This document shows, one piece after another, positions 8,798 through 63,556 of a stretch of DNA of 64,000 bases. The DNA lies in IMG/VR virus record IMGVR_UViG_3300034117_001294, positions 124,001-188,000 of that record, one strand, 5' to 3'. The translations under genes were made by a program, and so were the position numbers. Within the stretch, counting starts at the first letter, position 1. Every line of letters begins with the position of its first letter. Below the pieces are notes generated by a model. It was not told where the DNA came from and ran no database searches. It worked only from the letters and a program-made list of their open reading frames with translations.

Positions 8798-8956
8798 ATG
8801 TTCGAAAGTATTGAATTGAGAAAAGTCGAGAACGGTATTGTTATTCTAATCAGAGATGACGAGAACAACGAAAAAGAGTTTGTATACGATACTGACCGCA
8901 AGGCTTTGAAATTCATCAAAGAATTGTTAGAAACTAAGGTAGCCAACGTAAAGTGA
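8798..8956 (+). CDS. hypothetical protein (52 aa)
   Basis: MFESIELRKVENG... fills the gap; stop overlaps the GTG of galE. Confidence 0.55.
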   Translation: MFESIELRKVENGIVILIRDDENNEKEFVYDTDRKALKFIKELLETKVANVK

Positions 8957-9957
8957 AAGTTATTTTAGTCACTGGCGGTAGTGGCTACGTAGGTAGTCAT
9001 GTTGCAAAAATGCTTTTCGAGCATGGGTATTTTCCTGTTGTATTTGACATGCAGGCCAAAGCAAGGCCGTGGGCAAGTCCCCATTGGCCTGCTGTTTGCG
9101 GAGACATAAACAACAAATGGTCATTAGACTTGTTATTTGAACAGTGGCAATTTGATGCAGTTATACACCTTGCCGCTAGTAGCGAAGTTGGTGCGAGTGT
9201 TACTGATCCATTAAGATACTATCAAAACAATGTAGGCGGAACAGCCGAGTTGTTGCGAGCCTGTGCAAAACATAACGTAACCAAAGTTATTTTTAGTTCT
9301 ACAAGTAGTGTCTACGGAGAGGTCAATATCAATAATCTTCCTACTAAAGAAGATCATGCTAAAACTCCAGTTACTAGTTACGGCTCAAGTAAATGGGCTG
9401 TTGAATGTATGCTACGAGATGTAGACATAGCACATAATATTAGGTCAGTTAGCTTACGATATTTTAATGCCAGCGGTGCTAGTCCGGATGGTACGATCGG
9501 AGAATTTCGTAACAGACCCACGCATTTGATTCCTAGCATACAAAATGTATACGACGGAAAAAAGGATGCGTTTGATATTTACGGAGTAGACTATCCTACA
9601 AAGGATGGTAGTGCTGTTCGTGACTTTACTCACATATGGGACATTGCAGATGCACATTTAAAAGCATTGCAGTATCTTGATGCAGGCGGAAAAACTGATG
9701 CAGTTAACATAGGTGCAGGGTCCGGCAAGAGTGTCTTAGAGATGTTAATCGAATACCAAGACCAAAAAGACCAAGCAATCACTGTTAACATAACGCCAAG
9801 AAGGCCCGGCGATATCCCTATGAATTATGCAGACATTGCCAAGGCAAAAAGCATTCTCGATTGGGAGCCAAAAATGAGTAGTGCTAAAAAAATTATAGAA
9901 GATGCTATTCAATGGTATTCAAGTGACCTTTACAAAGAACTAGCGAGTAATTCATGA
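8953..9957 (+). CDS. galE: UDP-glucose 4-epimerase
   Basis: TGGSGYVGSH, HLAA, FSSTSSVYG, YGSSK (YxxxK), LRYFNASG, DGSAVRDFTH, RRPGD. Confidence 0.9.
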   Translation: MKVILVTGGSGYVGSHVAKMLFEHGYFPVVFDMQAKARPWASPHWPAVCGDINNKWSLDLLFEQWQFDAVIHLAASSEVGASVTDPLRYYQNNVGGTAELLRACAKHNVTKVIFSSTSSVYGEVNINNLPTKEDHAKTPVTSYGSSKWAVECMLRDVDIAHNIRSVSLRYFNASGASPDGTIGEFRNRPTHLIPSIQNVYDGKKDAFDIYGVDYPTKDGSAVRDFTHIWDIADAHLKALQYLDAGGKTDAVNIGAGSGKSVLEMLIEYQDQKDQAITVNITPRRPGDIPMNYADIAKAKSILDWEPKMSSAKKIIEDAIQWYSSDLYKELASNS

Positions 9958-33072: not shown

Positions 33073-36017
33073 GTACCATTAGTAATCTACCCGTTATTGG
33101 TTCAATAACAACGGCAACTAGTATGCCTGTTGCTGACGGCAACCTAACTAAACAGATGACTGTAGGGCAGTTAGGCGAATTCATTAATAATGAATTAGTC
33201 ACATTCAATGTGTCAACGGCAACTACTAGCACTATTGGCGGAATTAAAATTGGCGATGGTTTAAATATTGACCAAGAAGGATTTTTAAATGTAACAACTG
33301 TTGCTACTACTGCAACTACTTCTACTCTAGGAACAATTATAGTAGGCGACGGTTTAGAAATTGTTGAAGGTGTAGTCAATGTAGTTTCAATGGGTGCAAC
33401 TGGTGCTCGGGGTGCAACTGGCACTAGAGGATCGACTGGTGCAACTGGTCCTAGACTGACCGCAGTAATTTCAACTTCAAGACCATCGGTGGCAGCGGCT
33501 GGGGACATGTGGCTTGATACTCAAGAAACAGGACAACTGTTTACTTACAACGGTTCTGTTTGGGTATCAGCAAGTCCTGGTGGTGCTGTTGGAGAAACGG
33601 GAGCAACTGGTTCAGTCGGTGCTACGGGTGCAACTGGGTATCAGGGTGCCACCGGTGCTACCGGATTTACTGGCGGGCCAGGTGCTACAGGCTTAACCGG
33701 TGCAACTGGTGCCCAAGGCATTCCTGGCACATTTGCAGGTCAAGGGTCTACTGGTGCAAGCGGATTGCCGGGCGTAGACGGTGCAACTGGTGCAACTGGT
33801 AGTGGTAGCACAGGTGCAACCGGAGTTGGTTTCATTCCTTTGTATTCTCAAACTACTGCAACTATCAGTTTAAACACTGTAACTTTCGTAACTCATTTAT
33901 CGTCTAGTACTGTAGCGTATACAGTAAGTTCTAGAGTAAGGGCTACTGCGGACGCTGATATTTTATCAAACTTTGACGGCATTGTTGAAAGTTTTATTGG
34001 AGATCAGCTCACTATTAGACCGTTAACTAGCTTTGGTGCAGGAACATTCCAAGCATGGACTATAACATTAGTCGGCGGACAAGGTGCTAGAGGTTCTACA
34101 GGACCGGATGGTGCTACCGGAGCAACGGGTATTGGATCTACTGGTGCTACCGGTGCTACTGGACCTCAAGGTGCTACTGGTGCAGGTGCTACAGGTGCTC
34201 AGGGAGAAATTGGATCTACTGGTGCTACCGGTGCTACTGGACTTCAAGGGGCAACAGGTAGTGGTAGTACAGGTGCTACAGGAAATATTGGATCAACTGG
34301 TGCTACAGGTGCTACAGGTGCAACTGGGCCAGTTGGTTCAACAGGTGCTACAGGTGCTACAGGTGCTACTGGTCCTCAAGGTGCTACTGGGCCCCAAGGC
34401 ATTCCTGGAACGTTTGCAGGTCAAGGAGCAACAGGTGCTCAGGGAGAAATTGGATCTACTGGTGCAACTGGATTGCAAGGCGGCACAGGTTCTACTGGAC
34501 CTCAAGGATCTGAAGGAAATATTGGTGCTACTGGTGCTCAGGGATCAACTGGTGCAACCGGAGCAGGTGCAACTGGAGCGACAGGTGCTATTGGAGCAAC
34601 AGGTGCTACTGGTGCTACTGGTCCAGCAGGTGCTACAGGATCTGGTGCTACAGGTGCAACCGGTGCACAGGGTGCTACAGGCCCACAGGGACAAAACGGT
34701 GCCACCGGTCAAGGTGCTTCAGGTTCAACTGGACCGCAAGGTGATCAAGGATCAACAGGAGCAACCGGATTAACAGGTTCAACTGGTCTGGGTGCCACAG
34801 GTTCAACTGGTGCAACTGGATTCATCGGTGCTACAGGTGCCGTTGGTGAGTTCGGTAGTACAGGTGCTACAGGTATTCAAGGCACTACCGGAGCGTTTGG
34901 AGCAACAGGTGCTACAGGACCGACTGGAACTAGAGGATCAACAGGGGCTACTGGCCCAGCAGGTGCTACTGGTAGTGGTTCTACCGGTGCTACAGGTGCA
35001 GCCGGACAGTTTGGGTCTACTGGGGCTACAGGGCAATGGGGATCTACTGGTGCTACTGGTCTATGGGGATCTACTGGTGCCACTGGTCCAACAGGATCAA
35101 CTGGACCTGGATACCTACAACTAATTTCTACATCAACTACCTTAGTTATAACTACCAGTACTTCGACTTTTGTATTTCAAGTTGATAAAGCATACGGAAC
35201 TAATGCGTATACAACATCAACTCGTGTTCGTGCAGTGGCATTTACCAGTACTGCATTTAGCACAGTTATTGACGGCTACGTTGAATGGTATACTGGCACT
35301 AATATAGGTATTGCTCCATATACCATTAACGGGCCGGGAACATTTAAAGATTGGTCTATTAGTCTTACTGGTGCAAGAGGATTTCAAGGATTTACAGGTG
35401 CCACTGGTCCTGCTGGTGCAACAGGTGCAATTGCAAATCCATTAAGTAGCGTCTTTACAATTACAAATACTACCAGTGCAACTTCAACAAACTCTGGTGC
35501 TCTACAAGTTGTAGGTGGTGCTGGCATTGGCGGAAACTTACATGTTGGCGGAAATATTTCAGTCAATAATAGTCAGGCTGTAAACGGCCCTGCATTCTCA
35601 GTTTATCCAGACTCGGGAGTAACGCAGACAATTACTTCTGGAACACAACAAAAAGTGTTGTTCCAACTTGAAGATTTTGACACTAATGGAAATTTTGCCA
35701 GTTCAAGATTTACGCCCACTGTTGCAGGTTATTATCAACTAAATGCCGCAGTTCGCATAAGCGGTACTATGGGTACTGGTGAAAGCATGTTAGTTATTTG
35801 GAAAAATGGATCAGAGTATAAGCGTGGTTGGAATGCAAGTGGCACAGAAGTAGGTGCTAGTTTCTTTAGCATGGGCGTAAGCACTATAGCTTATGCTAAC
35901 GGAACTGGAGATTATTTTGAAGTCTATATTCAACAGACTAGCGGCAGCAGTAAAGATATTACCGTTGCTGGCGGAAACATTACATGGTTTAACGGCTGCA
36001 TGATGCGTGGTGCGTAA
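33069..36017 (+). CDS. collagen-like fibre with C1q-like head
   Basis: GAT/GST repeats; C-terminal PAFSVY...KVLFQ.EDFDT...[10 protein letters not shown]. Confidence 0.8.
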
Positions 36018-41508: not shown

Positions 41509-41671
41509 AGTACAACCAAAAGATACTAGCAAGGGACATTTTTATGTCAGCATTTGTAAGAGTGCAGTACGTATTGCCGCAGGTGCAGCCCTTATTATGG
41601 GGTCATTAGTTGTGTGCGGTGCTTTGCTTATTCTAGCAGAAATTCTAGGCATTGTTGAGGAAGTGGTATGA
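41498..41671 (+). CDS. small membrane protein (57 aa)
   Basis: GTG start; hydrophobic helices; ends LGIVEEVV. Confidence 0.55.
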   Translation: MEIEVQPKDTSKGHFYVSICKSAVRIAAGAALIMGSLVVCGALLILAEILGIVEEVV

Positions 41672-42126
41672 TCTTCAACAAAATACAAGAACTTAAAAAG
41701 CAAGGAATGAAGATTGGCATTACCTTTAGCCAATTTGATATGTTACATGCAGGACACATTGCCATGTTAAGTGAGGCCCGCAACCATTGCGATTACCTGA
41801 TTGCAGGTTTGCAAAACAATGCCAAGTGGGATCGTCCAGAAAAGAATGAGCCCATTCAAAGTATTGTAGAACGACAAATACAATTGGCTGCAACTCGGTA
41901 CGTGGACGAAATTGTGGTGTATAATACTGAAAAAGACCTTGAAGATCTCTTGCTCATTTTGCCAATTGATGTTAGAATATTAGGTATAGAGTACGAAAAG
42001 AAGGAATTTACTGGTAAAGCTATTTGCTTACAAAGAGGCATTAACTTAGTTTTTAACGGTAGAGATCACAGTTTTAGTTCATCCAGCCTACGCAAACGTG
42101 TGGCAGAAGCAGAAAGTAAAAAATGA
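41668..42126 (+). CDS. cytidylyltransferase (TagD-like HxGH nucleotidyltransferase)
   Basis: FDMLHAGH, CDYLIAGL, YVDEIVVY, SSSSLR. Confidence 0.8.
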   Translation: MIFNKIQELKKQGMKIGITFSQFDMLHAGHIAMLSEARNHCDYLIAGLQNNAKWDRPEKNEPIQSIVERQIQLAATRYVDEIVVYNTEKDLEDLLLILPIDVRILGIEYEKKEFTGKAICLQRGINLVFNGRDHSFSSSSLRKRVAEAESKK

Positions 42127-47610: not shown

Positions 47611-48240
47611 ATGAGCTTTACATTTGATTTTAAAAAAGAACATCTAGAAGAAATGATTCACGGCAATCCGTATGTGGATCAATGGTATGATGCATTATAT
47701 GCAATTTTGCCAGAATACCAGATCAACACACCAGAACGTGTAGCAGCATTTGTTGCTCAATGTGCTCACGAAAGTGGCGGCTTTAGAGCACTTAAAGAAA
47801 ACTTAAACTACCGTGCAGTGACATTAAGGAAAGTATTTCCTAAATATTTCACAAGTGATGAAATGGCCGCACAATACGCTAACAAGCAAGAAGCAATTGC
47901 TAACAGAGTTTATGCGAATCGTATGGGCAACGGTAGCGAAGCAAGCGGAGACGGATTCCGTTATTGTGGTCGTGGATTAATTCAGTTAACTGGTAAAGAA
48001 AACTATTCTTGGTTTGCTGCTAGTTTAGAAATGTCTGTCGAAGAGGTTCCTGAATACTTGGCAACATTTGAAGGTGCTGTACAATCAGCGTGTTGGTTCT
48101 GGGAAAGCACTGGATTGAATAAAGAAGCAGATGCTGGCGATATTAAAACAATGACCAAAAAAATCAACGGCGGTTTTATTGGTTTAGAAGATCGTATTAA
48201 GCATTACAATCACGCATTGCATGTTCTAGGAGCACACTAA
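47611..48240 (+). CDS. GH19 chitinase-like endolysin
   Basis: AAFVAQCAHESGGF..LKENLNY, GRGLIQLTGKENY, SACWFW, TKKINGG..GLEDR. Confidence 0.9.
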   Translation: MSFTFDFKKEHLEEMIHGNPYVDQWYDALYAILPEYQINTPERVAAFVAQCAHESGGFRALKENLNYRAVTLRKVFPKYFTSDEMAAQYANKQEAIANRVYANRMGNGSEASGDGFRYCGRGLIQLTGKENYSWFAASLEMSVEEVPEYLATFEGAVQSACWFWESTGLNKEADAGDIKTMTKKINGGFIGLEDRIKHYNHALHVLGAH

Positions 48241-48241
48241 A

Positions 48242-48721
48242 ATGTGGCAATTAACTTGGATGCTAGGTCTATTACCTGATTGGTTTTGGGCATTAGTATT
48301 AATAGCAGGAGTGCTGGCGGTGCTAGCATCATTTGTTCTCAAGTTCATTCCTTTTGTTTCTACATACCGCTTGCCTTTACAGGTTGGCGGTATTTTAGCT
48401 TTGTTAGTGGGAGTTTACTTTCAAGGAGTAATTGCCAATGAAGCAAAGTGGGAAGCACGAGTAAAAGAATTAGAAGCTAAGTTAGTAATAGCCGAACAAG
48501 AAAGCAAACAGACAAATACTGTTATACAAGAAAAGATTGTAAAACAAAAAGAATTTGTCAAAGGCAAAACTGAATATATTACAAGATATATTGATAAAGA
48601 AATTATCAAGAAAGAAGAAATTGTCAAATATATCGAAACTTGTCCAGTTCCAAAAGAAATTATTGAGCTACATAATGCTGCTACTGAAATGAACAAAGCC
48701 GCAGAAGGAGCAAAGAAATGA
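48242..48721 (+). CDS. i-spanin (Rz-like)
   Basis: N-terminal TM helices and coiled coil, directly after the endolysin. Confidence 0.65.
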   Translation: MWQLTWMLGLLPDWFWALVLIAGVLAVLASFVLKFIPFVSTYRLPLQVGGILALLVGVYFQGVIANEAKWEARVKELEAKLVIAEQESKQTNTVIQEKIVKQKEFVKGKTEYITRYIDKEIIKKEEIVKYIETCPVPKEIIELHNAATEMNKAAEGAKK

Positions 48722-48987
48722 AATACAGTATTTTAGCACTTGTATTTTTTCTAGCAGCGTGTTCTACTGCGGTACCCGTAAAACAAAAATGGCCCGAGGC
48801 ACCTAAAGAACTTTTAGACAAGTGCCAGGCTTTGCAAAAAGCAGACCCTTCAAAGCCTGCTATAACAGATTTGCTAAAAACTGTAGTAGAAAATTACGGA
48901 CTGTATTATCAATGCAGTTTGAAGGTAGAAGGTTGGAATGAATGGTACACTGAGCAAAAACGAATATTTGATAATTCAAATAAATAA
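48718..48987 (+). CDS. o-spanin (Rz1-like lipoprotein)
   Basis: Lipobox LAAC, Pro-rich P..PKELL..C; 4-nt overlap with the i-spanin. Confidence 0.7.
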   Translation: MKYSILALVFFLAACSTAVPVKQKWPEAPKELLDKCQALQKADPSKPAITDLLKTVVENYGLYYQCSLKVEGWNEWYTEQKRIFDNSNK

Positions 48988-55165: not shown

Positions 55166-55540
55166 ATGCTATTAAATGAATTCTTTGGACGATTAAACAT
55201 CAAAAACGACAAGCCGTCGAGAAATGAAGAAACTGACAAACTTCAAGAAACACAGATGTTAGAGGATATACTAGAGTATATCATAAATGACGACAATTTG
55301 CATAAAAAGGTCTTCTTCCCAATCGCAGAAGAGATTGGAAACAAACCGACTGATGAGCATACTCCAAAAGTTTGGATGCCATTGGCAAACAAAGGCTGCA
55401 TGAAATTTTATCACAAATTTGATCTTAAAGAAGATCCTGTAAAGTTATTTTCTAAAGAGTTTAGAGAGTCTTTATGCACTCGATTATCAGAACACTATAA
55501 CGGCGACATTCTCAAAGGCCTATATCAATTAGGAAAATAA
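55166..55540 (+). CDS. putative internal head protein
   Basis: N-terminus MLLNEFF. Confidence 0.45.
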   Translation: MLLNEFFGRLNIKNDKPSRNEETDKLQETQMLEDILEYIINDDNLHKKVFFPIAEEIGNKPTDEHTPKVWMPLANKGCMKFYHKFDLKEDPVKLFSKEFRESLCTRLSEHYNGDILKGLYQLGK

Positions 55541-55541
55541 A

Positions 55542-58500
55542 ATGAATTTAAATGAGCTGTTTAGTAACAAAAAGAAAGTTGTGTCAGAAGGTGGAAATTT
55601 ATCGCTACCTGGCGGGCACGATGCACAGCAAATCGATCTTAAAGTGCATAATCGTTCCTACATTGTACCAATTTTAGATACACTGTTGATTAATATCAAC
55701 AGTTCTTTTGCAAAAAAATACAAAAAACCTTTGTGGAATCCGCAACTACTACAGAGTAAACAATTTCTAAGTGGAAGTAGTCTACACTTCTTTAATACCA
55801 AAGGTATTACTGACCAACAATTTGTAGAAAAGAAACCAAAAGTAGGCGACATTGACACACAGGTCAACAAAGAAAACGAACAAGAATTAGAACAATGGTT
55901 ATCTGCTAGTCAAGGTAAGATGGTAGGCAATGCCAAGTTCTTAGGTTTCCAAAGAGGCAACGAACAATTCTCCAGTTTATGGGAGCTACAAGACCCACCT
56001 ATTAAAGTGCAAATTGACTTAGAATTTGTAGAGTTTGACAAAGACGAACCCACTCCATGGAGCAAATTTAGTCATAGCAGCAGCTGGGATGATCTAAACG
56101 CAGGAGTTAAGGGTGTATTCCACAAGTTTTTAATTCAAAGTCTAGCATCATTAAGTAGAAAAGATTTCTTACTACGCAAAGCTGTAGGACGAGGCAAGGC
56201 CAAAGAAATACAAGATGTTCCTACAACTGATAACATGGTCAGCTTTGCAGTATCCAGTAAAGAAGGCGGCGGCCTACGTGCCAAATACGAACCAGTATTA
56301 GATGCAAACGGACAGCCTTTAATTAGTAACGGTATGCCAGTTATGCAGGCATTACCAGCAACTGGTTACGAACAAGACATTGGAAAGATTTTTGGATCTA
56401 TCTTTGGTTCGAGATTAAATCCTAAACAAGCTGCACAATTAGAAAGCAAGTACTGGAGCTTTACTGGTTTAGTTGATGCAATGAATACGCTAGTAACTCC
56501 AGAAGAAAAGCAGTCAGTGTTGTCTGCATTTATTGACAAAATATTTGGCAAGGGTGCCCAAGGTCTTTACAAAGGCGATCCAGAGCGTGATAGTGCAGAA
56601 AAATCTGCTGCATTGGATTTAATGATCAATAAATTAGGAGTTCAGACACCTAGTGATCTTGAACAGATGAAGCAGCAATACAAGGCATCGTACAGAGTTA
56701 CTGCTGAAAGTTTGCAAGAAGCAGAAGTTAAAGCACAGTTCCGTAAGAACATGCCACACCTACGTGATCTAAAGCCTATTGACTTTTTAGATCTATTGGA
56801 CGAGATTCACGATGGTAATGGTAATTTTAAATTACAAAACATTCCGTTAAATGTTAAGATTGACGGATTTGGCGGACGTTTTGGTAAGGATGCAGAAGGC
56901 AAGCCTTTTATGGCTACCAGCAATACTCCTCCAAGATATAAAGCAGGATTTGTACAATATCATCAAGACAAGGGCACAACTGATCCTGAAATTTTAGGTC
57001 GTGCAGAAAAGTTTGATGAACTGTTTAATGAAATGATGAACGCTATCAAATTGGTTGATAGCAAGCTAGGTGCAGACTTTCTTGTTAATAAACAGGTCAC
57101 CTGTGAAGTATTGTTCTTGCCGTTTGCAGCCGAAACGTCAGAGGGCAAATTAAAATTTGTAGGAATTCAATACGATAAGTTTCCTCCAGGTGTAGAATTA
57201 GTTCTTGTGCCGTTCCGTGTAGTAGATGCTAGTTCCGGAGAAGATGTACCTGATGCTAACGATGTTGTTACAAGTCTAAGCAAATTAGGCGGACAAGGAA
57301 GTGTTAGATTCCTTAGTAATAGTCTAGTACAAAAAGACGGACTTGATGTTACTGAGATTATTAATCCTTTAGATAATATCGAAGAACTAAAACAAATTGT
57401 ATCTGACACAGCAGGCAAAAGAGATCGTGCCAGTTTGCAACTAAGACGCGAAGTAGAAGAAAAATTAATGCCTGTTAAGATTGCACTGGAAAAGGCAATT
57501 GATGCAGATCCTAACATTATTGGCAAAGATATATTAGGTCAAGACTACGAAGGTATTGTTATCAACAGTCGTCTTGGCCCTATCAAAGTTACTAGCCAAC
57601 AACAAAAAGATATTATTACCCAAAAGAACGCTGCCAAAGCTGCCGCTCGTGCAGAACAGCCGCGTGGTGAAAACAAAACTGCGGTAGTTGCTATCGGTAG
57701 CTTTGTGGGACACAAAGGTCATCAACAGCTATTTGGTCTTACAATTAATAAGGCAAAAGAAGTCAGCGGCGATCCTTATCTGTTTATGGGCAGTGCAGTA
57801 GGTGCAGACGATCCTATTCCAGTTGCTGACAAAATTAAAACTTGGAAACAATTGTATCCCGAGTATGCAGGCAATATCAGTGCTGTAACACAAGAGGGCG
57901 GATCTTTGATGCAAAAGATCAAGCACGAGTTAATCAACCCGTTGCCAGGCAAGCCACCACGCTACGATAATGTTATTATTATGGTAGGTGAAGATCAGGC
58001 CAAGATGCCTATCGCACAGGCCCTAATGAAGGCAGTTAATAAGTTTCCTGGATACGAGCATGTTAAGGTACAATTAGAAGTTACTCCTAGAGGAACTGGC
58101 ATGAGCTTTACTAAGCTACGTAACGTGTTAAAAACTGGAGATGAGCAACAAGCATTCCAAATGTGGAATGATGCATTCAATGGCGGCCAGGATGGAGCAA
58201 AACCATTACCGTCACAATGGATTAAACATTTAATGGATGTGTCAAAGACCGGAATGAGCACACCTCAACCAAAGCCAGCAGTTAAGAAGCCTGCTGTACT
58301 ACCTACTCCGCAGACTGTTCAACAACCTGCACTAGGTGAAATGAGATTGTTTAATGCACTAATGAGTCCTAAAAAAATTGTAAATGAAAAGACTATTGAA
58401 GAACGTAAACGTAAAAAAAGTAAAGGTGCAGCATGGGGTCCAGGGCCATATGGTTGGTACGGATTTGATGCAGGTTATAGTGGTAACGGTGGAGATGGTG

Positions 58501-60350
58501 GTAGTGATGGTGGTGAGAGCATGAATCAAGAAAACTTTGCTGATAGTCGTAATCCACAAGACAACAGCAACAGTAAACGGCAAATGTTAAAAATTGCATC
58601 ATTAAACAATATTAAAGATGTGAACAAAATTAATGCAGGGCAGATGTTAAAATTGCCTAACGGCACAACTTATAAAGTAATGCCTGGAGATACCCTGTCT
58701 ACAATTGCGGCAAGACAAGTGAAAGATCAATCTTCTCCAATGCCCCAACCCTCAGTTAAACAAGGTCCAAACTCTAACATAGATCAAACGACAAGAGATA
58801 AAGCACAGGCATTTGTTGGTCAACAAAAACCAGAAATGGGTGGTGGCAGGGGGGTCGTTAATCCAGCAACCGTCCGGCCCGACGAACCAACCCAAACCGG
58901 AGTTCGAAGTGGTCCTAACACAAACATAGATCAACCAGCAAGAGATAGGGCCAAAGCGGCTGTTACTAAAATTTCTAGTGAAGACGATATCATGAATATG
59001 GTTAAAGATCATGAAGGTGTAAAAAATAAACCATACCAAGATACAAAAGGATTATGGACTGTAGGAGTAGGTCACTTAATTGGTGATGGCAAGACTCTCC
59101 CTTCAGAGTGGAAAAGAACATTTTCAGACGCAGAAATAATGAATCTGTTTAAAAAGGATTATCAGCATCATAAACAGGCAGCAGAAAAAATTCCTGGATT
59201 TAGTAATTTAAACATGAACGGACAGGCTGCTCTAATTGATCTAACATTTAACATGGGTCCAAGATGGTGGAAGGCTTGGCCTAATTTTACAAAAGCCATG
59301 CAAGCAGGAAACATAGATCAAGCAGCAAATGCATTAAAAAATAGTGCATGGTATTCACAAGTTGGTAGAAGAGCACCTAAAATTGTATCTCTTTTACAGA
59401 GCGGAGATCGATCTGTAGCAGAAAACTTTGCGGATGGACGTAATCCACAAGACAAGGGCGACAGTAAACGTCACGGCGTTCCTACAAAATCGTCAGTGAG
59501 CAATCTACGTAAAGTAGCTAAACAAGGCGGCCGTAAAGGACAATTAGCACATTGGATGGCAAATATGAAAGCAGGTAAAGCAAAAGCTAAGAATGAAGAC
59601 TTCAACGGCGAATACGACGACGAAGCAGGAATGGCACAGAGTAATCTACGCACAATGGCTCGTGCAGTTGATGGTTTATTAAAAACTATTAAGAGCAACG
59701 ATAACTTGCCAGAATGGGGACAAGAAAAGATTGCCAAAGCAGAAATGATGTTGGTCAGTGTCTGGGATTATTTGTTAAGCCAAAAAGAAATGGGCATGGA
59801 TCCTAAGATCAACGAAAGCAAGGCTGTAGAAAGTTTAAGACAGATTGTCGCAGAGTTGTCCAATGAAAAATTAGGACAATATAAAAAGGCCGCCGGTGAT
59901 CAAGCAACTGCCGCAGACAAAGCGGGCGACTATGCTAAGGGTCATAAACGTTTCAAAGGAATTGTTAAAGCAACTAACAAGCAGTTTGATAATGATGCTA
60001 AAAAGCATAGAGAGCAAGGTATGGCGGAGGCTGGCAGCAATGCTATAGATACTGTATCTAAACGCTTAACTGATCCTAAAGATGGAATGACAGCCAAACT
60101 TAGAGCAGCTGGTGATAAGAAACGCGATAGTCAGTACATGGGCACACAGATTGCTAAGAATGATCGAACCAGTAAAGACGAATGGGGCAACTTAAAAGAA
60201 AAGATTAAAGGTGCAGACGGCAAAGCCTGTTGGAAAGGTTATAAGTACGCAGGTACTAAGAACGGTAAAGACAAGTGTGTGCCAATTGGCGAAGCCTACG
60301 AACTTGAAATGACCCTGGCTATTCTAAAGCTGTTTGAAAGTAATAAATGA
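55542..60350 (+). CDS. 1602-aa multidomain polyprotein: pol-beta-like NTase, ligase-like adenylation domain, HxGH nucleotidyltransferase, LysM, GH24 lysozyme, short head-protein modules
   Basis: GSS..VGDID; KIDG/CEVLF/EGIVI/IKV; GHKGH...VGEDQ...MSFTKLR; LysM YKVMPGDTLSTIA; HEGVKNKPYQDTKGLWT (E-x8-D-x5-T). Confidence 0.7.
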   Translation: MNLNELFSNKKKVVSEGGNLSLPGGHDAQQIDLKVHNRSYIVPILDTLLININSSFAKKYKKPLWNPQLLQSKQFLSGSSLHFFNTKGITDQQFVEKKPKVGDIDTQVNKENEQELEQWLSASQGKMVGNAKFLGFQRGNEQFSSLWELQDPPIKVQIDLEFVEFDKDEPTPWSKFSHSSSWDDLNAGVKGVFHKFLIQSLASLSRKDFLLRKAVGRGKAKEIQDVPTTDNMVSFAVSSKEGGGLRAKYEPVLDANGQPLISNGMPVMQALPATGYEQDIGKIFGSIFGSRLNPKQAAQLESKYWSFTGLVDAMNTLVTPEEKQSVLSAFIDKIFGKGAQGLYKGDPERDSAEKSAALDLMINKLGVQTPSDLEQMKQQYKASYRVTAESLQEAEVKAQFRKNMPHLRDLKPIDFLDLLDEIHDGNGNFKLQNIPLNVKIDGFGGRFGKDAEGKPFMATSNTPPRYKAGFVQYHQDKGTTDPEILGRAEKFDELFNEMMNAIKLVDSKLGADFLVNKQVTCEVLFLPFAAETSEGKLKFVGIQYDKFPPGVELVLVPFRVVDASSGEDVPDANDVVTSLSKLGGQGSVRFLSNSLVQKDGLDVTEIINPLDNIEELKQIVSDTAGKRDRASLQLRREVEEKLMPVKIALEKAIDADPNIIGKDILGQDYEGIVINSRLGPIKVTSQQQKDIITQKNAAKAAARAEQPRGENKTAVVAIGSFVGHKGHQQLFGLTINKAKEVSGDPYLFMGSAVGADDPIPVADKIKTWKQLYPEYAGNISAVTQEGGSLMQKIKHELINPLPGKPPRYDNVIIMVGEDQAKMPIAQALMKAVNKFPGYEHVKVQLEVTPRGTGMSFTKLRNVLKTGDEQQAFQMWNDAFNGGQDGAKPLPSQWIKHLMDVSKTGMSTPQPKPAVKKPAVLPTPQTVQQPALGEMRLFNALMSPKKIVNEKTIEERKRKKSKGAAWGPGPYGWYGFDAGYSGNGGDGGSDGGESMNQENFADSRNPQDNSNSKRQMLKIASLNNIKDVNKINAGQMLKLPNGTTYKVMPGDTLSTIAARQVKDQSSPMPQPSVKQGPNSNIDQTTRDKAQAFVGQQKPEMGGGRGVVNPATVRPDEPTQTGVRSGPNTNIDQPARDRAKAAVTKISSEDDIMNMVKDHEGVKNKPYQDTKGLWTVGVGHLIGDGKTLPSEWKRTFSDAEIMNLFKKDYQHHKQAAEKIPGFSNLNMNGQAALIDLTFNMGPRWWKAWPNFTKAMQAGNIDQAANALKNSAWYSQVGRRAPKIVSLLQSGDRSVAENFADGRNPQDKGDSKRHGVPTKSSVSNLRKVAKQGGRKGQLAHWMANMKAGKAKAKNEDFNGEYDDEAGMAQSNLRTMARAVDGLLKTIKSNDNLPEWGQEKIAKAEMMLVSVWDYLLSQKEMGMDPKINESKAVESLRQIVAELSNEKLGQYKKAAGDQATAADKAGDYAKGHKRFKGIVKATNKQFDNDAKKHREQGMAEAGSNAIDTVSKRLTDPKDGMTAKLRAAGDKKRDSQYMGTQIAKNDRTSKDEWGNLKEKIKGADGKACWKGYKYAGTKNGKDKCVPIGEAYELEMTLAILKLFESNK
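58530..59473 (+). repeat. 53-bp direct repeat pair (58530-58582 and 59421-59473)
   Basis: 46/53 identical by hand alignment; both encode ENFAD(S/G)RNPQD..(N/D)SKR. Confidence 0.85.
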
Positions 60351-60621: not shown

Positions 60622-60993
60622 ATGAGAGCAAAAGAATTCATCGCTGAAAGAAAAGAAGGTAAGATAACAAAACGTCAGCAACAATCTACTAGGGGTCTGC
60701 ATCGTTATTCAGACGCCGAAAAAGCAGATAGCGGTTATGTTAGCTTTAGAGTAGGCATGGCCGCAGCTATGAGCGATGGAAAAAATAAATTAGACATCGA
60801 TTCAAAGAGTTGGGCAGGAAAGAAAAAGACTGCACATCCTTACACTCAAGTGGAAGCAGACATGCTCAAAGCAGCATACAAAGCTGCCGGTGCCAGTTAT
60901 GAAGATATGAATCACGGCGATATGGATAGTTGCGAGTTAGACTCGACTAATATATACGGGCCTGTACCAGATAGAAAGAAACTAACAAAATGA
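60622..60993 (+). CDS. putative internal head protein with T4 CTS-like N-terminus
   Basis: MRAKEFIAE versus T4 capsid-targeting sequence MKTYQEFIAE; TAAATA upstream. Confidence 0.6.
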   Translation: MRAKEFIAERKEGKITKRQQQSTRGLHRYSDAEKADSGYVSFRVGMAAAMSDGKNKLDIDSKSWAGKKKTAHPYTQVEADMLKAAYKAAGASYEDMNHGDMDSCELDSTNIYGPVPDRKKLTK

Positions 60994-62177
60994 GAATTAA
61001 ACAACTTTTAGAATCAGCAACTACTGGAGGCACAAGCTCAGCATCAGTAGCAACAGTTGCAAAAGGCAGTAAGGGAATGATTAAACGTCAGAAACCTACT
61101 GACAATGCATTGGATAGTGGAAAGTTGTTTCAAGAAACTAACGCTGCGGAAGGCAAGGAAGATAAGATTGCTCAACTAAAGAAAGACCATGACACCGCAG
61201 TGCATTGGAGCAAGAATGAAACAAGCCCACAAAAGCGTGAGGCTGCTCGTCAAAAGGCTGAAAAGATCAAGCGTCACTTAGATACACAATACAAGCAAGG
61301 TGTGGCGGAGGTTAGTGATGCTACGCTAACCAGTTATCTAACAAAATTAGATAAAGATAATCTTAAACACAGAATGGATCCCACAAAACGCAGTGACACA
61401 AAACGCATGAAAAGTGGTCCTAATTTTGTTAAAGCGTTTACCAAATTGGATAATAAAAAGCAAGGTGTGGCGGAGGCCACAGGTGACGAAAAATTTGATA
61501 AATCAATGAGAAAAATGACTGGAAAAATTACTCCAGGCGATGCTGACGAGATGTGGCCGACACAAGAATTTGAACCAGTTGATCTTGATCCATCATACTT
61601 GCCAAGTATGGAAAAATACAAGGCAAAATTATTTCCATTGGCTTACCAATACTGGACTGACGGCGACAATGCAGATGAATTAAGAGCATTAGGATGGGAA
61701 CCCGATTATGGCGACGACTATGTTATGGTGGTGCTGTCTGGCATCGGACACGACGGTCACATTCAATACGACAAATATGATTTTGATGCTGAAGATGAAA
61801 ACAATGAAGGTGTGGCGGAGGTAGCACCGCCGGGAGCCAAAGCCGAACGCATGGTCAAGCATATTAAAAAGGGATATGCTAAAGATGGTAAGTTAACTAA
61901 AACTGAAAAAAGCAAGGCATACGGTGCTGCATGGAAAGCACACAATGCCGGCAAAGTAGAAGAACAAAGTGTAGAAGAAAACAAGAAAGGTGTACGTGCT
62001 GTGAAACATGCAGTTAAGCCTAGAAACTTTGTTGCCAAGAACGCAGTACAAAGTGGTGCAGGTGCTCACAAAGATAAAAAGAAAGCACAAAAGCAAGGTG
62101 ATGTAAAACACAAGGCTAAAGAGCCAGCTTACGAATCTAAGCTATGGGCAGCATTAGATCGAAGAATTATCAAGTAA
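60990..62177 (+). CDS. modular putative internal head polyprotein
   Basis: MRIKQLLES start; modules separated by (Q/E)GVAE. Confidence 0.6.
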   Translation: MRIKQLLESATTGGTSSASVATVAKGSKGMIKRQKPTDNALDSGKLFQETNAAEGKEDKIAQLKKDHDTAVHWSKNETSPQKREAARQKAEKIKRHLDTQYKQGVAEVSDATLTSYLTKLDKDNLKHRMDPTKRSDTKRMKSGPNFVKAFTKLDNKKQGVAEATGDEKFDKSMRKMTGKITPGDADEMWPTQEFEPVDLDPSYLPSMEKYKAKLFPLAYQYWTDGDNADELRALGWEPDYGDDYVMVVLSGIGHDGHIQYDKYDFDAEDENNEGVAEVAPPGAKAERMVKHIKKGYAKDGKLTKTEKSKAYGAAWKAHNAGKVEEQSVEENKKGVRAVKHAVKPRNFVAKNAVQSGAGAHKDKKKAQKQGDVKHKAKEPAYESKLWAALDRRIIK

Positions 62178-62593
62178 TGAAAATCATAGACCTATTAGAG
62201 GATGTAAATTCAAAACCTGATTTTATGAAAATACTTCAGGAGTTTCTTCCCTTTGCAGTCAATGAACTTAAATTAAAATCTGTTCCAAAAATTAAAATGC
62301 ATTTACGTATTGGCAGCGTAGATGATCAACCTAGTTTTGGTAGTTTTAACAGTGAAACTAAAATAATCAATATTGCAATTGAAGATAGACATCCTTTAGA
62401 TATTTTAAGAACTCTTGCACACGAGATGGTACATTACAAACAAAACGAAGAAACTGGACTGAAGCCAGGTGCGGGTGCTACCGGTAGCCCTGAAGAAAAT
62501 CAAGCACACGAACTAGCTGGTATTGTGATGCGTAAATTTAATAAAGCGAACCCTGAATTTTTTAATACCGACGCTGTTAATCTAGAAGAATAA
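62177..62593 (+). CDS. HExxH zincin-like protein with CTS-like N-terminus
   Basis: MKIIDLLED; LAHEMVHYKQ...EENQA; ATG at 62177. Confidence 0.55.
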   Translation: MKIIDLLEDVNSKPDFMKILQEFLPFAVNELKLKSVPKIKMHLRIGSVDDQPSFGSFNSETKIINIAIEDRHPLDILRTLAHEMVHYKQNEETGLKPGAGATGSPEENQAHELAGIVMRKFNKANPEFFNTDAVNLEE

Positions 62594-63286: not shown

Positions 63287-63556
63287 ATGTCAAAAGCATT
63301 CGGTGCACCAGAGCAAGCAAAGATTAAGCAGATTGTCGCAGAAGGTATGACAGTTATGCAGGAAATTCAAGACTTAACAGAAGGATTGAATGAAACAATC
63401 AAAGCTGTTGCAGAGGAACTTGAAGTCAAGCCAAGCGTTATCAAGAAGGCTATCAAGATTGCACAAAAAGATACATGGGATCAAGTGTTCCGTGAGTTTG
63501 ATGATTTGGAAACTATTGTTGATATTAGCGGTCACAGTTTTCGTAAGGAAGATTAA
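63287..63556 (+). CDS. T4 DsbA/GapR-like small DNA-binding protein
   Basis: Helical pattern ...IQDLTEGLNETIKAVAEELEVKPSVIKKAIKIA. Confidence 0.55.
   Translation: MSKAFGAPEQAKIKQIVAEGMTVMQEIQDLTEGLNETIKAVAEELEVKPSVIKKAIKIAQKDTWDQVFREFDDLETIVDISGHSFRKED

What the first reader, a model, noticed from the sequence alone, without database searches (positions are those of the whole stretch)
55542..60350. Packaged multi-enzyme polyprotein: three nucleotidyl-transfer domains plus LysM-lysozyme
Seen, in order: CTS-like start; pol-beta-type NTase motifs (GSS...GDID at ~55840); ligase-type motifs (KIDG at ~56856, CEVLF, EGIVI, IKV); HxGH nucleotidyltransferase (~57711); LysM (~58590-58720); GH24 lysozyme with an E-x8-D-x5-T triad (~58980-59400); and short basic modules. 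Linkers are rich in hydrophobic-x-E sites (SLQE, ALGE, IVNE, SVAE, KINE, GMAE, KLFE). Inference: the prohead protease cuts it into separate enzymes delivered at infection. The lysozyme would breach the wall, and the nucleotide enzymes may repair tRNA/RNA, rebuild NAD or make or destroy signalling nucleotides to counter immunity. The substrates are unknown, and I know of no described pathway for this three-domain set.
Basis: partly seen in the sequence, partly recalled or inferred. Interest (0 to 1): 0.85.

Follow-up and report, generated by a model that had tools for sequence, protein, structure and literature searches.

The report
Capsid-targeted three-enzyme phage polyprotein with lysozyme
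A jumbo-phage gene encodes one 1602-residue protein that fuses three different nucleotide-transferring enzymes to a cell-wall-cutting module, and it carries the address tag and cut sites that T4-type phages use to load proteins into the capsid for injection; what the three enzymes act on is still unknown.

Summary
ORF 55542-60350 (+, 1602 aa) is real and has the reported domains at the reported coordinates. D1 (aa 17-393) is a Pol-beta-type NTase, D2 (396-705) a ligase-type covalent NTase, and D3 (706-915) a HIGH/HxGH NTase. These are followed by LysM, a GH24 lysozyme with an intact E-x8-D-x5-T triad, and a basic tail. The claim that linkers are rich in hydrophobic-x-E sites is at chance level overall.

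Three specific sites are nevertheless conserved:
- a T4-CTS-like 13-17 aa leader ending (L/I/V)-x-E|GGN
- a site at the D1/D2 junction (113/120 homologs; controls 0/120)
- a G-V-A-E|G/A motif at module edges in the variable tails (74 observed against about 2 expected)

No such site separates D2 from D3.

D3 is homologous to the cyanophage "cytidyltransferase", which mass spectrometry found in two cyanophage virions and which carries a CTS-like leader. D1, D2 and a HIGH NTase are adjacent separate genes in Xanthomonas and Stenotrophomonas phages. LysM-lysozyme is a cassette bracketed by 54-nt repeats and occurs in about 3% of the listed relatives.

Best reading: a head-packaged, protease-processed, injected multi-enzyme protein. 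This is a new variant of known kinds. The substrate is unknown; nucleic-acid end repair is the leading guess.

The parts
55542..60350 (+). Whole ORF, 1602 aa, including stop
   Evidence: RBS and coupling to the upstream ORF
55542..55589 (+). N-terminal leader (aa 1-16, MNLNELF...VSE|GGN), a T4 capsid-targeting-sequence-like propeptide
   Evidence: The leader is disordered in the AF2 model. In the family it is 13-17 aa long, with F7 invariant and [LIV]-x-E before GGN in 102-118 of about 120 homologs. Of 56 standalone D1 homologs, 26 start at M-GGN and the rest carry leaders such as MKKFKQFLKE|GGN. T4 IPII/III begin MKTYQEFIAE|A.
55590..56720 (+). D1 (aa 17-393): Pol-beta-superfamily nucleotidyltransferase of a family with no Pfam model; catalytic G78-S79, D103, D105, D159
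56712..56723 (+). Conserved cleavage-type site L-Q-E|A at the D1/D2 junction (aa 391-394)
   Evidence: [LIVM]xE[AGS] occurs in 113/120 homologs within a linker of variable length, against 0/120 in control windows.
56727..57656 (+). D2 (aa 396-705): covalent (ligase/capping-type) nucleotidyltransferase; K439 (motif I KIDG), E522 (III), F539 (IIIa), E670-G671 (IV), K682 (V); no OB domain
57657..58286 (+). D3 (aa 706-915): HIGH-superfamily (cytidylyltransferase-like) nucleotidyltransferase; H724-K-G-H727, SFTKLR860
58287..58583 (+). Pro/Gln-rich linker plus a Gly/aromatic-rich insertion that the closest relatives lack; it ends in the first ENFADxRNPQD...SKR module
58529..58582 (+). Left copy of the 54-nt direct repeat bracketing the LysM-lysozyme cassette
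   Evidence: 87% identical to 59420-59473
58584..58727 (+). LysM-like peptidoglycan-binding element (aa 1015-1062) with permuted or partial order of the profile halves
58744..58964 (+). Two copies of a GPNxNIDQxxRDxA repeat (74-nt units, 70% identical)
59004..59378 (+). GH24 (T4-type) lysozyme domain, aa 1155-1279, with the E1158-x8-D1167-x5-T1173 triad
   Evidence: Pfam PF00959, E = 1e-15, above the curated cut-off; PHROG hits; triad
59420..59473 (+). Right copy of the 54-nt direct repeat
59421..60227 (+). Basic, Lys-rich modular tail (pI about 9.5); contains the family motif Q-G-M-A-E|A at aa 1492-1497 (nt 60015-60032)
60228..60347 (+). Conserved C-terminal element CWKGY...CVP plus about 20 residues
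   Evidence: Occupancy in the family is about 0.8-0.9. The motif occurs in 65/121 members and in a neighbouring CTS-bearing protein of L003.
55166..55540 (+). Upstream coupled ORF beginning MLLNEFF, the same start as family leaders (context)
60622..62177 (+). Two downstream ORFs with CTS-like N-termini (MRAKEFIAE|R and MRIKQLLE|S); candidate fellow internal proteins (context)
   Evidence: the L003 orthologs begin MRARDFIKE|A

Best explanation
The gene encodes a capsid-internal (ejection) polyprotein of a PA5oct-related, T4-like jumbo phage.

Proposed mechanism. Apart from the sequence-level observations noted, every step is inferred:
1. The 16-residue N-terminal leader acts like a T4 capsid-targeting sequence and brings the whole 1602-aa precursor into the prohead core.
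2. The T4-type prohead protease, which cuts after Glu, removes the leader at E16|G17.
3. The protease releases D1 at E393|A394.
4. It probably also cuts at G-(V/M)-A-E|(A/G)-type sites in the tail (E1496|A, perhaps E1294|N).
5. D2 and D3 stay joined as one two-domain enzyme.
6. The fragments are ejected with the DNA.

Inferred roles of the parts:
- The LysM-lysozyme module is an optional cassette in this lineage and would locally open the peptidoglycan.
- The basic tail modules would travel with the DNA.
- The three nucleotidyltransferases would work together as one pathway at the very start of infection, before any phage gene is expressed. They are a Pol-X/PAP-like NMP adder, a lysine-nucleotidylating ligase-type enzyme, and a HIGH-type NTP:phosphate-substrate transferase.

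The most likely job is healing and sealing broken nucleic-acid ends. RNA/tRNA is my first guess and nicks or gaps in the injected DNA my second. The substrate is not established.
For: Shown:
- Domain identities and conserved catalytic residues.
- The core is conserved at 63-90% identity in hundreds of metagenomic proteins, on contigs of up to 330 kb.

The leader:
- Its length (13-17 aa), its F at position 7 and its (L/I/V)-x-E end all match the published CTS definition: 10-19 residues, targeting through residues 4 and 7, processing through residues 8 and 10, cleavage after Glu (PMC9026906).
- It matches the real T4 IPI/II/III N-termini.
- It is facultative. Of 56 standalone D1 proteins, 26 begin exactly at M-GGN, and the rest carry CTS-like leaders ending at E|GGN.

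Cleavage-type sites:
- D1/D2 linker: 113/120. D2/D3 linker: 0/120. Core control windows: 0/120.
- G[VAMIL]AE[GAS] occurs 74 times in the tails against 1.9 +/- 1.3 expected, and at chance in the cores. It sits at the edges of indels.

Virion presence of homologs:
- S-SZBM1_140 (hhalign prob 94.7%, E = 6e-8) and S-CREM2 gp154 (95.1%, E = 3e-8) were detected by LC-MS in purified virions (PMC9146016; PMC10665884 Table 3).
- They begin MRFRQFIIE|A and MKNFSSFLTE|A.

Context:
- Neighbouring ORFs carry CTS-like starts: 3 of 7 near the gene against 1 of 66 elsewhere (with a pattern defined after seeing the data).
- A separate GH19 endolysin cassette lies at 47.6-49 kb.
- Cell-wall modules recur in relatives' tails: LysM, lysozyme, VanY, PG_binding_1.
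- The nearest cultured relative, PA5oct, has a prohead scaffold/protease and T4-like affinities (PMC7318152).

The three domains as one functional unit:
- The gene order D1 - X - D2 - HIGH NTase occurs in Xanthomonas phage BUDD and Stenotrophomonas phage Ps15.
- A D2-like gene precedes the D3-like gene in cyanophages.
- D1+D2 and D2+D3 fusions exist.
- Pol-beta NTases are known to partner RNA ligases in repair: RlaP (PMC7824862; bioRxiv 10.64898/2025.12.29.696909).
Against: - There is no direct evidence, by MS or otherwise, that this protein or any D1-D2-D3 fusion is in a virion.
- The query's own leader is a weaker CTS match than many relatives: N at position 4, and V rather than L/I at the -3 position.
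- The invariant E before GGN could be part of the enzyme rather than a cleavage residue.
- The gene lies between chaperone genes (DnaJ, deformylase, Clp-like ATPase) and replication genes, not in a head module.
- The prohead protease of this phage is not in the window.
- PA5oct's leaderless D3-like protein (EST35_0307) was not flagged by virion MS.
- The two cyanophage MS detections rest on only 2-3 peptides.
- The motif enrichments are computed on related sequences, so the counts are not independent events.
- The very high conservation of the core is unusual for injected anti-defence cargo.
- For the RNA-repair idea, no kinase or phosphatase end-healing domain is present, D1 is not a member of RlaP/PF10127, and D3 has no known role in polynucleotide repair.
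Confidence: 0.58

Rival explanations
1. A cytoplasmic, non-packaged multifunctional enzyme made early or mid infection, for example for RNA/DNA end repair or nucleotide-cofactor metabolism. On this view the N-terminal extension is just part of the protein, and the conserved x-E motifs are structural or linker features. The lysozyme cassette would be an incidental fusion.
For: - The neighbourhood is chaperones and replication genes, conserved in a 330-kb relative.
- The core is very highly conserved, as expected of a housekeeping enzyme.
- About half of standalone D1 proteins and several D3 proteins (S-H9-1 gp145, PA5oct 0307) have no leader.
- PA5oct 0307 was not MS-flagged.
Against: - It does not explain why cell-wall-binding and cell-wall-cutting modules keep being fused to a cytoplasmic enzyme when the phage has its own endolysin.
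- It does not explain why leaders that match the T4 CTS appear and disappear exactly at the domain boundary.
- It does not explain why a hypervariable linker keeps a hydrophobic-x-E|A site in 113/120 homologs.
- It does not explain why leader-bearing D3 homologs are found in virions (PMC9146016, PMC10665884).
Confidence: 0.22
2. A tail- or baseplate-associated structural protein with a muralytic domain (in the manner of T4 gp5, tape-measure or tail-lysin proteins). The enzyme-like domains would serve mainly as structural scaffolds.
For: [quoted passage not shown]
- In Ps15 and BUDD the D1-D2 cluster lies next to baseplate hub genes.
- Tail fibre genes are present in the window.
Against: - The lysozyme is absent from about 97% of the listed relatives, so it cannot define the family's role.
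- Catalytic residues of all three NTases are invariant, which argues for active enzymes.
- There is no similarity to tail, tape-measure or hub folds in the core.
- The leader is of the head-targeting type.
Confidence: 0.1
3. The protein is the phage's endolysin, or a lysis accessory with extra domains.
For: PHROG phrog_7 and NCBIfam 'endolysin' hits cover the GH24 region.
Against: - A separate compact lysis cassette exists: a GH19 endolysin, a membrane protein and a lipoprotein at 47.6-49 kb.
- The lysozyme cassette is optional in the family.
- A 1602-aa, three-enzyme endolysin has no precedent.
Confidence: 0.03

Closest known systems
T4 internal proteins and Alt (CTS-targeted, gp21-processed, injected head proteins)
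   Same: - A short N-terminal propeptide of the MKTYQEFIAE / MKTFKEF type ending hydrophobic-x-E.
- Proposed cleavage after Glu.
- Enzyme cargo delivered with the DNA.
- A cluster of neighbouring genes with similar leaders.
   Different: - T4 IPs are small, single-function proteins. This is a 1602-aa multi-enzyme precursor with internal cleavage-type sites.
- The cargo enzymes (Pol-beta NTase, ligase-type NTase, HIGH NTase, lysozyme) are not among T4's packaged proteins.
- Packaging is inferred here, not shown.
Polyvalent proteins of phages and conjugative elements (Iyer et al. 2017, PMC5512222)
   Same: - A large multidomain protein that combines unrelated catalytic domains with a lysozyme.
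- Proposed co-delivery with the invading DNA.
- Variable domain complements between relatives.
   Different: - There is no embedded zincin peptidase and no MuF or portal fusion. Processing would be by the prohead protease.
[quoted passage not shown] This protein has both.
- The N-terminal 900 aa are a fixed, highly conserved core rather than shuffled modules.
Cyanophage 'cytitidyltransferase' (T4-GC190; e.g. P-SSM2_194, S-SZBM1_140, S-CREM2 gp154) with the adjacent DUF6267 gene
   Same: - D3 is homologous to it (hhalign prob 95-98%).
- The order of a ligase-like gene followed by a HIGH NTase is the same.
- Leader-bearing members are virion-associated by MS (PMC9146016, PMC10665884).
- Foldseek aligns D2-D3 with 590-730-aa cyanophage proteins.
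   Different: - In most cyanophages these are separate genes.
- No D1 partner was recognised there.
- The D2-DUF6267 homology is only suggestive (E = 0.002, prob 13%).
- The function is unknown in cyanophages too.
RNA repair sets: RNA ligase plus RlaP Pol-beta NTase (T4 NrdC.11 / PF10127)
   Same: A Pol-beta NTase is genetically linked to a ligase-type NTase. RlaP adds 1-2 NMPs to damaged RNA 3' ends before ligation (PMC7824862; bioRxiv 10.64898/2025.12.29.696909).
   Different: - D1 does not match PF10127 (0 of 57 members).
- D2 matches no RNA- or DNA-ligase Pfam family.
- There is no kinase or phosphatase partner.
- A HIGH NTase partner is not part of any described RNA repair set.
ASFV Pol X plus ASFV DNA ligase (minimal gap-filling and nick-sealing pair)
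   Same: Structural neighbours of D1 include family-X polymerases (Pol beta, Pol mu, AsfvPolX). The best solved-structure neighbour of D2 is AsfvLIG.
   Different: - The matches are weak (E = 8e-3 and 5e-3, TM about 0.2-0.37).
- D2 has no OB domain.
- There is no evidence for a DNA substrate.

Membership tests
Pol-beta nucleotidyltransferase superfamily (D1) | hG[GS] motif followed by [DE]h[DE]h, plus a third carboxylate on a later strand | tested here: met
   G78-S79, D103-I-D105 and D159 are invariant in 57 diverse homologs. They lie on a helix-turn, strand 103-109 and strand 155-163 of the model. The GS-to-DxD spacing is 24 residues, longer than usual.
Pol-beta nucleotidyltransferase superfamily (D1) | Palm-domain fold shared with solved members | tested here: met
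   The Foldseek top hits are almost all Pol-beta-fold NTases (Pol beta, Pol mu, MenT4, JHP933, PAP, TUT1/7, PolX), but they are weak: best E = 8e-3, prob 0.97-0.98, TM 0.25-0.37.
RlaP (PF10127) RNA-ligase-associated NTase | Match to the PF10127 profile | tested here: not met
   No PF10127 hit (nor any NTase family) at E <= 0.1 in any of 57 D1 homologs, nor in the query at E <= 1.
Covalent nucleotidyltransferases (ATP/NAD ligases, RNA ligases, capping enzymes) (D2) | Motif I KxDG with the catalytic lysine, and motifs III, IIIa, IV (EG) and V (K) in order | tested here: met
   K439-x-D441-G442 (+R446), E522, F539, E670-G671 and K682 are invariant or >=90% conserved. Motif V has a single Lys (K-V-T).
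Covalent nucleotidyltransferases (D2) | NTase-domain fold | tested here: met
   AsfvLIG, prob 0.95-0.97, E = 5e-3. Viral 'RNA ligase' models, E = 7e-6 and 3.5e-5. The D2 hits are diluted because the model also holds D3.
DNA ligase / mRNA capping enzyme subgroup | C-terminal OB domain with motif VI | tested here: not met
   Motif V is followed by one helix and then D3. There are no Pfam ligase or capping hits.
Covalent nucleotidyltransferases (D2) | Formation of a lysyl-NMP adduct | not testable with these tools
   This needs an adenylylation/guanylylation assay with labelled NTP or NAD.
DUF6267 (PF19782; cyanophage gene upstream of the cytidyltransferase) | Match to the family profile | tested here: inconclusive
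   The query has no Pfam hit. Profile-profile comparison gives E = 0.002, prob 13.5%, collinear over motifs I-III. The shared features are the N-terminal H-L element, KxDG at about residue 45-50, and a 12-residue spacing between the motif IV E and the motif V K.
HIGH / cytidylyltransferase-like nucleotidylyltransferases (D3) | (H/T)xGH motif after the first beta strand, and a second ISxxxxR-type motif | tested here: met
   G719-S-F-V-G-H724-K-G-H727 is one residue shorter than the canonical GxFxxxHxGH. S-F-T-K-L-R860 is conserved.
HIGH / cytidylyltransferase-like nucleotidylyltransferases (D3) | Rossmann-like fold of PPAT / NMNAT / FMNAT | tested here: met
   RibF FMNAT E = 7e-5, PPAT TM up to 0.64 (normalised to target), NadD, all at prob 1.00.
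HIGH / cytidylyltransferase-like nucleotidylyltransferases (D3) | Pfam or NCBIfam match above the curated cut-off | tested here: not met
   Only sub-threshold FAD_syn (14-16 bits against a 27-bit cut-off, in 16/19 homologs) and RibF NCBIfam (17.5 bits).
Cyanophage cytidyltransferase family (T4-GC190) | Profile homology to annotated members | tested here: met
   hhalign results: S-H9-1 gp145 98.1% (E = 1e-13), P-SSM2_194 96.8%, S-CREM2 gp154 95.1%, S-SZBM1_140 94.7%, PA5oct 0307 88%.
T4-type CTS-targeted internal head proteins | 10-19-residue N-terminal propeptide with targeting residues 4 and 7 and processing residues at -3 and -1 (Glu) | tested here: met
   The family leader is 13-17 aa with F7 invariant. 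Position 4 is F in half the family (N in the query). The leader ends [LIV]-x-E (V-S-E in the query) (PMC9026906).
T4-type CTS-targeted internal head proteins | A T4-type (gp21) prohead protease in the same genome | not testable with these tools
   The head module is not in the 64-kb window. The closest cultured relative, PA5oct, has one (PMC7318152).
T4-type CTS-targeted internal head proteins | Presence of the processed protein in virions | not tested
   Shown only for distant D3 homologs in two cyanophages (PMC9146016, PMC10665884).
Polyvalent proteins (Iyer et al. 2017) | Several unrelated effector domains in one polypeptide of a mobile element | tested here: met
   There are three NTases, LysM and a lysozyme. 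Relatives carry VanY, Amidoligase_2, DUF6934 and PG_binding_1.
Polyvalent proteins (Iyer et al. 2017) | Embedded zincin-like peptidase, or fusion to MuF or portal, for processing and packaging | tested here: not met
   No such domain was found by Pfam, PHROGs or NCBIfam.
GH24 T4-type lysozyme | PF00959 above the cut-off and the Glu-x8-Asp-x5-Thr catalytic triad | tested here: met
   58.5 bits against a 22.3-bit cut-off; E1158, D1167, T1173.
LysM | Complete beta-alpha-alpha-beta domain in canonical order | tested here: not met
   The Pfam score is above the cut-off (28.9 against 20.9), but it comes as two partial stretches. Profile positions 22-43 come first, then the N-terminal half. The arrangement is conserved in P0001, P0003 and P0018.

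The most novel reading that the evidence does not exclude
D1, D2 and D3 form a previously unrecognised three-step nucleotidyl-transfer pathway. T4-related jumbo phages and cyanophages would pre-load it into their capsids and inject it, so that it acts before any phage gene is expressed. One possibility is restoring and sealing cleaved tRNA/RNA, which would solve the problem that a cell with cut tRNAs cannot translate phage repair genes. Another is nucleotidyl-capping or repairing the ends of the incoming DNA or RNA. If true, this would assign a function to DUF6267 and to the 'cytidyltransferase' core gene of T4-like cyanophages. It would also show that the prohead protease can turn one CTS-tagged polyprotein into several injected enzymes.
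Probability: 0.3. Interest if true: 0.85.

Novelty: new variant of a known kind. Interest (0 to 1): 0.66.

Why it matters
Packaged, injected proteins are a phage's first move against the host, and few enzymatic ones are known beyond T4 Alt, the IPs and virion RNA polymerases.

This family is abundant. There are hundreds of 90%-identity clusters of the fusion. The related 'cytidyltransferase' occurs in 557 cultured-phage records, and DUF6267 gives at least 8000 metagenomic clusters. All of them lack a known function.

The fusion acts as a Rosetta stone. It says that three unassigned phage enzymes work together. The leader and cut-site pattern suggests how they may reach the host, which has not been shown. 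That turns a set of 'hypothetical' cyanophage and jumbo-phage core genes into a testable biochemical problem. If the leader is confirmed as a CTS, it would also extend the T4 capsid-targeting and processing system to polyprotein cargo, and the leader could then serve as a portable packaging tag.

Tried and rejected
- Megablast against cultured phages found no match. No cultured phage has the fusion: the best tblastn coverage was 31%.
- Single-sequence and profile HMM searches of D1 and D2 against PDB sequences found nothing usable. The Huntingtin hit is a low-complexity artefact.
- Pfam, NCBIfam and PADLOC give no named family for D1 or D2.
- The P-SSM2 'tRNA ligase' and the large hypothetical genes next to cyanophage cytidyltransferases (S-SZBM1_139 and _142, S-H9-1 gp143, P-SSM2_195) show no detectable relation to the core. 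Neither does the BUDD gene between D1 and D2.
- The small cytidyltransferase of BUDD is only weakly related to D3 (E = 0.011). It is an analogue in position, not a proven orthologue.
- Literature searches for 'cytitidyltransferase' and 'DUF6267' found nothing. The Burroughs and Aravind 2016 RNA-repair paper is not held in the library.
- No virion proteome exists for Ps15.
- Promoter and terminator scans around the gene were at or near background and uninformative.
- My first CTS regular expression was too strict and missed obvious cases. The revised one was defined after seeing the data, so its p-value is indicative only.
- I considered CD-NTase/cGAS-like signalling synthesis for D1 and rejected it as unsupported. 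No such structural neighbours appeared among the top 50 hits, and there were no PADLOC hits.


Full report
**1. The observation**

The window has one uninterrupted ORF at 55542-60350 (+), 1602 aa. An AGGA-type ribosome-binding site lies about 8 nt upstream. The ATG comes 1 nt after the stop of the preceding ORF, so the two genes are tightly coupled.

- G78-S-S and G-D103-I-D105 at nt 55773-55856
- K439-I-D-G at nt 56856, with C-E522-V-L-F, E670-G-I-V-I and I-K682-V
- H724-K-G-H at nt 57711
- LysM at about nt 58590-58720
- a GH24 lysozyme with E1158-x8-D1167-x5-T1173

Only LysM and Phage_lysozyme pass Pfam thresholds. The three N-terminal domains had to be tested in other ways.

**2. The three enzyme domains are real**

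A word-indexed search found 769 relatives. In these, the first ~900 residues are 63-90% identical while the rest varies. An exhaustive HMMER scan of 1.8 billion representative proteins found 972 relatives. They include D1 alone, D1+D2, D2 alone and D2+D3, which sets the boundaries at about 1-390, 396-700 and 707-915.

D1:
- The invariant residues among 57 diverse homologs are G78, S79, D103, D105, D159, K190, K195, D350 and K354. This is the Pol-beta NTase signature plus a third carboxylate.
- The AF2 model is confident (pLDDT 92.7, pTM 0.89).
- Its solved-structure neighbours are almost all Pol-beta-fold NTases: Pol beta, Pol mu, MenT4, JHP933, PAP, TUT1/7 and AsfvPolX. The scores are weak (best E = 8e-3, TM 0.25-0.37), so only the palm is shared.
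- No Pfam family, including RlaP/PF10127 and NTP_transf_2, matches any of the 57 homologs.

D2:
- The conserved columns are K439, D441, G442, R446, E522, F539, E670, G671 and K682. These are motifs I, III, IIIa, IV and V of the ligase/capping superfamily.
- The D2-D3 model is confident (pLDDT 92.1).
- D2 resembles ASFV DNA ligase (prob 0.95-0.97) and viral RNA ligase models (E = 7e-6).
- There is no OB domain, and no ligase Pfam family matches.

D3:
- It keeps H724-x-G-H727 and S-F-T-x-L-R860.
- A family profile hits the HxGH region of RibF FAD synthetase (E = 0.0015).
- The model matches FMN adenylyltransferase, PPAT (TM up to 0.64 normalised to target) and NadD at prob 1.00.

The 'three nucleotidyl-transfer domains' are therefore confirmed. 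D1 and D2 belong to families that have no curated model.

**3. The three domains form one unit**

- In Xanthomonas phage BUDD, adjacent genes encode D1 (hhalign prob 99.9%), an unknown protein, D2 (99.2%, full length) and a small annotated adenylyl/cytidylyltransferase.
- Stenotrophomonas phage Ps15 has the same order, ending in an annotated NMN adenylyltransferase. There the cluster lies next to a virion structural protein, the baseplate hub and an 'internal virion protein with endolysin domain'.
- D3 is homologous to the 'cytitidyltransferase' of T4-like cyanophages (S-H9-1 gp145 98%, P-SSM2_194 97%). That family is present in 557 cultured-phage records.
- The gene directly upstream of it in S-SZBM1 and S-H9-1 is DUF6267. 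Its layout resembles D2: an N-terminal H-L element, KWDG at about residue 50, and an EG(F/Y)VAI...K element near the C-terminus.
- The profile-profile link between D2 and DUF6267 is weak but collinear (E = 0.002, prob 13.5%). Foldseek aligns D2-D3 with 590-730-aa cyanophage proteins.
- I found no paper on the function of any of these genes.

**4. Packaging and processing**

The general claim that the protein is rich in hydrophobic-x-E sites fails: 31 sites against 28.7 +/- 4.4 in shuffles. Specific sites, however, are conserved.

(a) The leader.
- Family N-termini are 13-17 residues long, of the form M-(N/I/L)-L-x-(E/D)-(L/I/F)-F ... (L/I/V)-x-E, and are followed by an invariant GGN.
- Of 56 standalone D1 proteins, 26 begin exactly at M-GGN. 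The rest carry leaders such as MKKFKQFLKE|GGN, MRAREFITE|GGN and MKSFKEFLSLLSE|GGN.
- T4's own internal proteins, read from the T4 record, begin MKTYQEFIAE|A and MKTFKEF...ITE|A.
- The published definition of a CTS is a 10-19-residue propeptide, with targeting through residues 4 and 7, processing through residues 8 and 10, and cleavage after Glu (PMC9026906).
- Residues 1-17 are disordered in the model.

(b) The D1/D2 linker. Its length and sequence vary, but 113/120 homologs keep (L/I/V/M)-x-E|(A/G/S) just before the start of D2. Same-length windows inside the domains give 0/120, and so does the D2/D3 linker.

(c) The tails. The motif G-(V/A/M/I/L)-A-E-(G/A/S) occurs 74 times in the variable tails against 1.9 +/- 1.3 expected, and at chance level in the cores. 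It marks the edges of module-sized indels between close relatives. The query has Q-G-M-A-E|A at residues 1492-1497.

These counts come from related sequences, so they are not independent events.

**5. Virion evidence from homologs**

- In cyanophage S-SZBM1, LC-MS of CsCl-purified particles detected the cytidylyltransferase (ORF140) and the next ORF (139) (PMC9146016).
- In S-CREM2, ORF154 (cytidylyltransferase) and ORFs 155 and 156 were detected. The authors suggested that the enzyme is encapsidated (PMC10665884, Table 3).
- Both proteins are D3 homologs (94.7% and 95.1%).
- Both begin with textbook leaders, MRFRQFIIE|A and MKNFSSFLTE|A. P-SSM2_194 begins MKSFSQFLTE|T.
- Leaderless members exist: S-H9-1 gp145 and PA5oct EST35_0307. 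The PA5oct protein is not flagged by virion MS, although it lies among MS-confirmed structural genes.

**6. Context in the window**

- The phage is closest to PA5oct-like jumbo phages: the clamp loader is 57% identical. PA5oct encodes a prohead scaffold/protease and groups with T4-like viruses (PMC7318152).
- Upstream of the gene lie genes for a DnaJ-like protein, a deformylase-like protein and a Clp-type ATPase, plus three small ORFs. This order is conserved in a 330-kb contig, where a family-B DNA polymerase lies downstream.
- Several neighbours start with CTS-like sequences: 60622-60993 with MRAKEFIAE|R, 60990-62177 with MRIKQLLE|S, and 55166-55540 with MLLNEFF. Their orthologs in L003 do the same.
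- With a pattern defined after seeing the data, such starts occur in 3 of 7 ORFs at 55-63 kb against 1 of 66 elsewhere.
- A separate lysis cassette lies at 47.6-49 kb: a GH19 endolysin, a membrane protein and a lipoprotein. The GH24 domain is therefore not the endolysin.

**7. The C-terminal half**

- LysM and lysozyme occur in only about 3% of the listed relatives.
- In this gene they form an 891-nt unit bracketed by 54-nt direct repeats that are 87% identical (58529-58582 and 59420-59473). The repeats encode duplicated ENFADxRNPQD...SKR modules.
- Other relatives carry VanY plus LysM, PG_binding_1, Amidoligase_2 or DUF6934.
- The tail is basic, with pI about 9.5.
- The last ~40 residues, with a CWKGY...CVP element, are widely conserved. 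The element recurs in a neighbouring CTS-bearing protein of L003.

**8. Interpretation**

The most economical reading is a CTS-tagged precursor that is loaded into the prohead. It would be trimmed after Glu at the leader, at the D1/D2 junction and at tail-module edges, and then ejected with the DNA. D2-D3 would stay as one enzyme.

The chemistry is inferred only from the families:
- D1 transfers an NMP to a hydroxyl.
- D2 forms a lysyl-NMP and transfers it to a 5' phosphate.
- D3 joins an NMP to a phosphorylated substrate.

The known pairing of Pol-beta NTases (RlaP) with RNA ligases in RNA repair makes end repair the leading hypothesis (PMC7824862; bioRxiv 10.64898/2025.12.29.696909). The Pol X / ASFV-ligase-like structural neighbours point the same way. 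Against it:
- D1 is not an RlaP member.
- No kinase or phosphatase is present.
- D3 has no known place in such a pathway.

Confidence is about 0.58 for packaging and processing and about 0.3 for RNA repair in particular.

**9. Novelty**

The concepts are known: T4 CTS cargo, polyvalent proteins (PMC5512222), and virion-associated cyanophage cytidyltransferases. I could not find the following described anywhere:
- the fused three-NTase core
- the two unmodelled families D1 and D2
- their conserved linkage
- CTS-type leaders that appear and disappear at the D1 and D3 boundaries
- a polyprotein apparently designed for the prohead protease

I therefore rate it a new variant of a known kind, with moderately high interest.

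Noticed in passing
window 58529-58582 and 59420-59473: A 54-nt direct repeat (87% identical, 891 nt apart) brackets exactly the LysM-lysozyme segment. It suggests cassette gain or loss by recombination between duplicated ENFADxRNPQD...SKR linker modules.
   Followed up: partly
window 58584-58727 (aa 1015-1062): The LysM element has the C-terminal half of the Pfam profile first, then NGTT, then the N-terminal half. It may be a circularly permuted LysM. The arrangement is conserved in the lysozyme-bearing relatives P0001, P0003 and P0018.
   Followed up: partly
window 60622-60993, 60990-62177, 55166-55540, 62144-62593 (internal start 62225): Neighbouring ORFs begin with T4-CTS-like sequences (MRAKEFIAE|R, MRIKQLLE|S, MLLNEFF..., MKILQEFLPFAVNE|L). 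This may be a cluster of internal head proteins. The L003 orthologs have similar starts.
   Followed up: partly
window 60228-60290; L003 about 15883: The C-terminal CWKGY...CVP element of the target also occurs near the C-terminus of a different CTS-bearing protein in the related 330-kb contig. It may be a second shared packaging or anchoring element.
   Followed up: no
window 47611-48987: A compact lysis cassette: a GH19/chitinase-type endolysin (phrog_181, E = 7e-78), then a membrane protein and a lipoprotein with a signal-peptide-like start.
   Followed up: partly
window 63287-63556: A small ORF that closely resembles PA5oct EST35_0310, an MS-confirmed 91-aa structural protein that precedes the DNA polymerase. 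This suggests synteny with PA5oct.
   Followed up: no
window 30535-36017: Two adjacent large collagen-like tail-fibre paralogs (845 and 982 aa) with identical N-terminal starts (MSTISNLP...) and higher GC (0.45-0.48) than the rest of the window (about 0.39).
   Followed up: no
window 2518-4610, 8953-9957, 41668-42126: A sugar-modification gene set: two glycosyltransferases, a nucleotide-sugar epimerase, and an RfaE-domain-II-like heptose-1-phosphate adenylyltransferase, which is a second, unrelated HIGH-type NTase.
   Followed up: no
L008 (S-SZBM1 ORFs 139-142), L010 (S-CREM2 gp154-156), L005 (P-SSM2_194-195): In cyanophages, the ORFs just downstream of the cytidyltransferase are also virion-detected but show no similarity to the target's tail. 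DUF6267 has at least 8000 clusters at 90% identity in metagenomes and no known function.
   Followed up: partly
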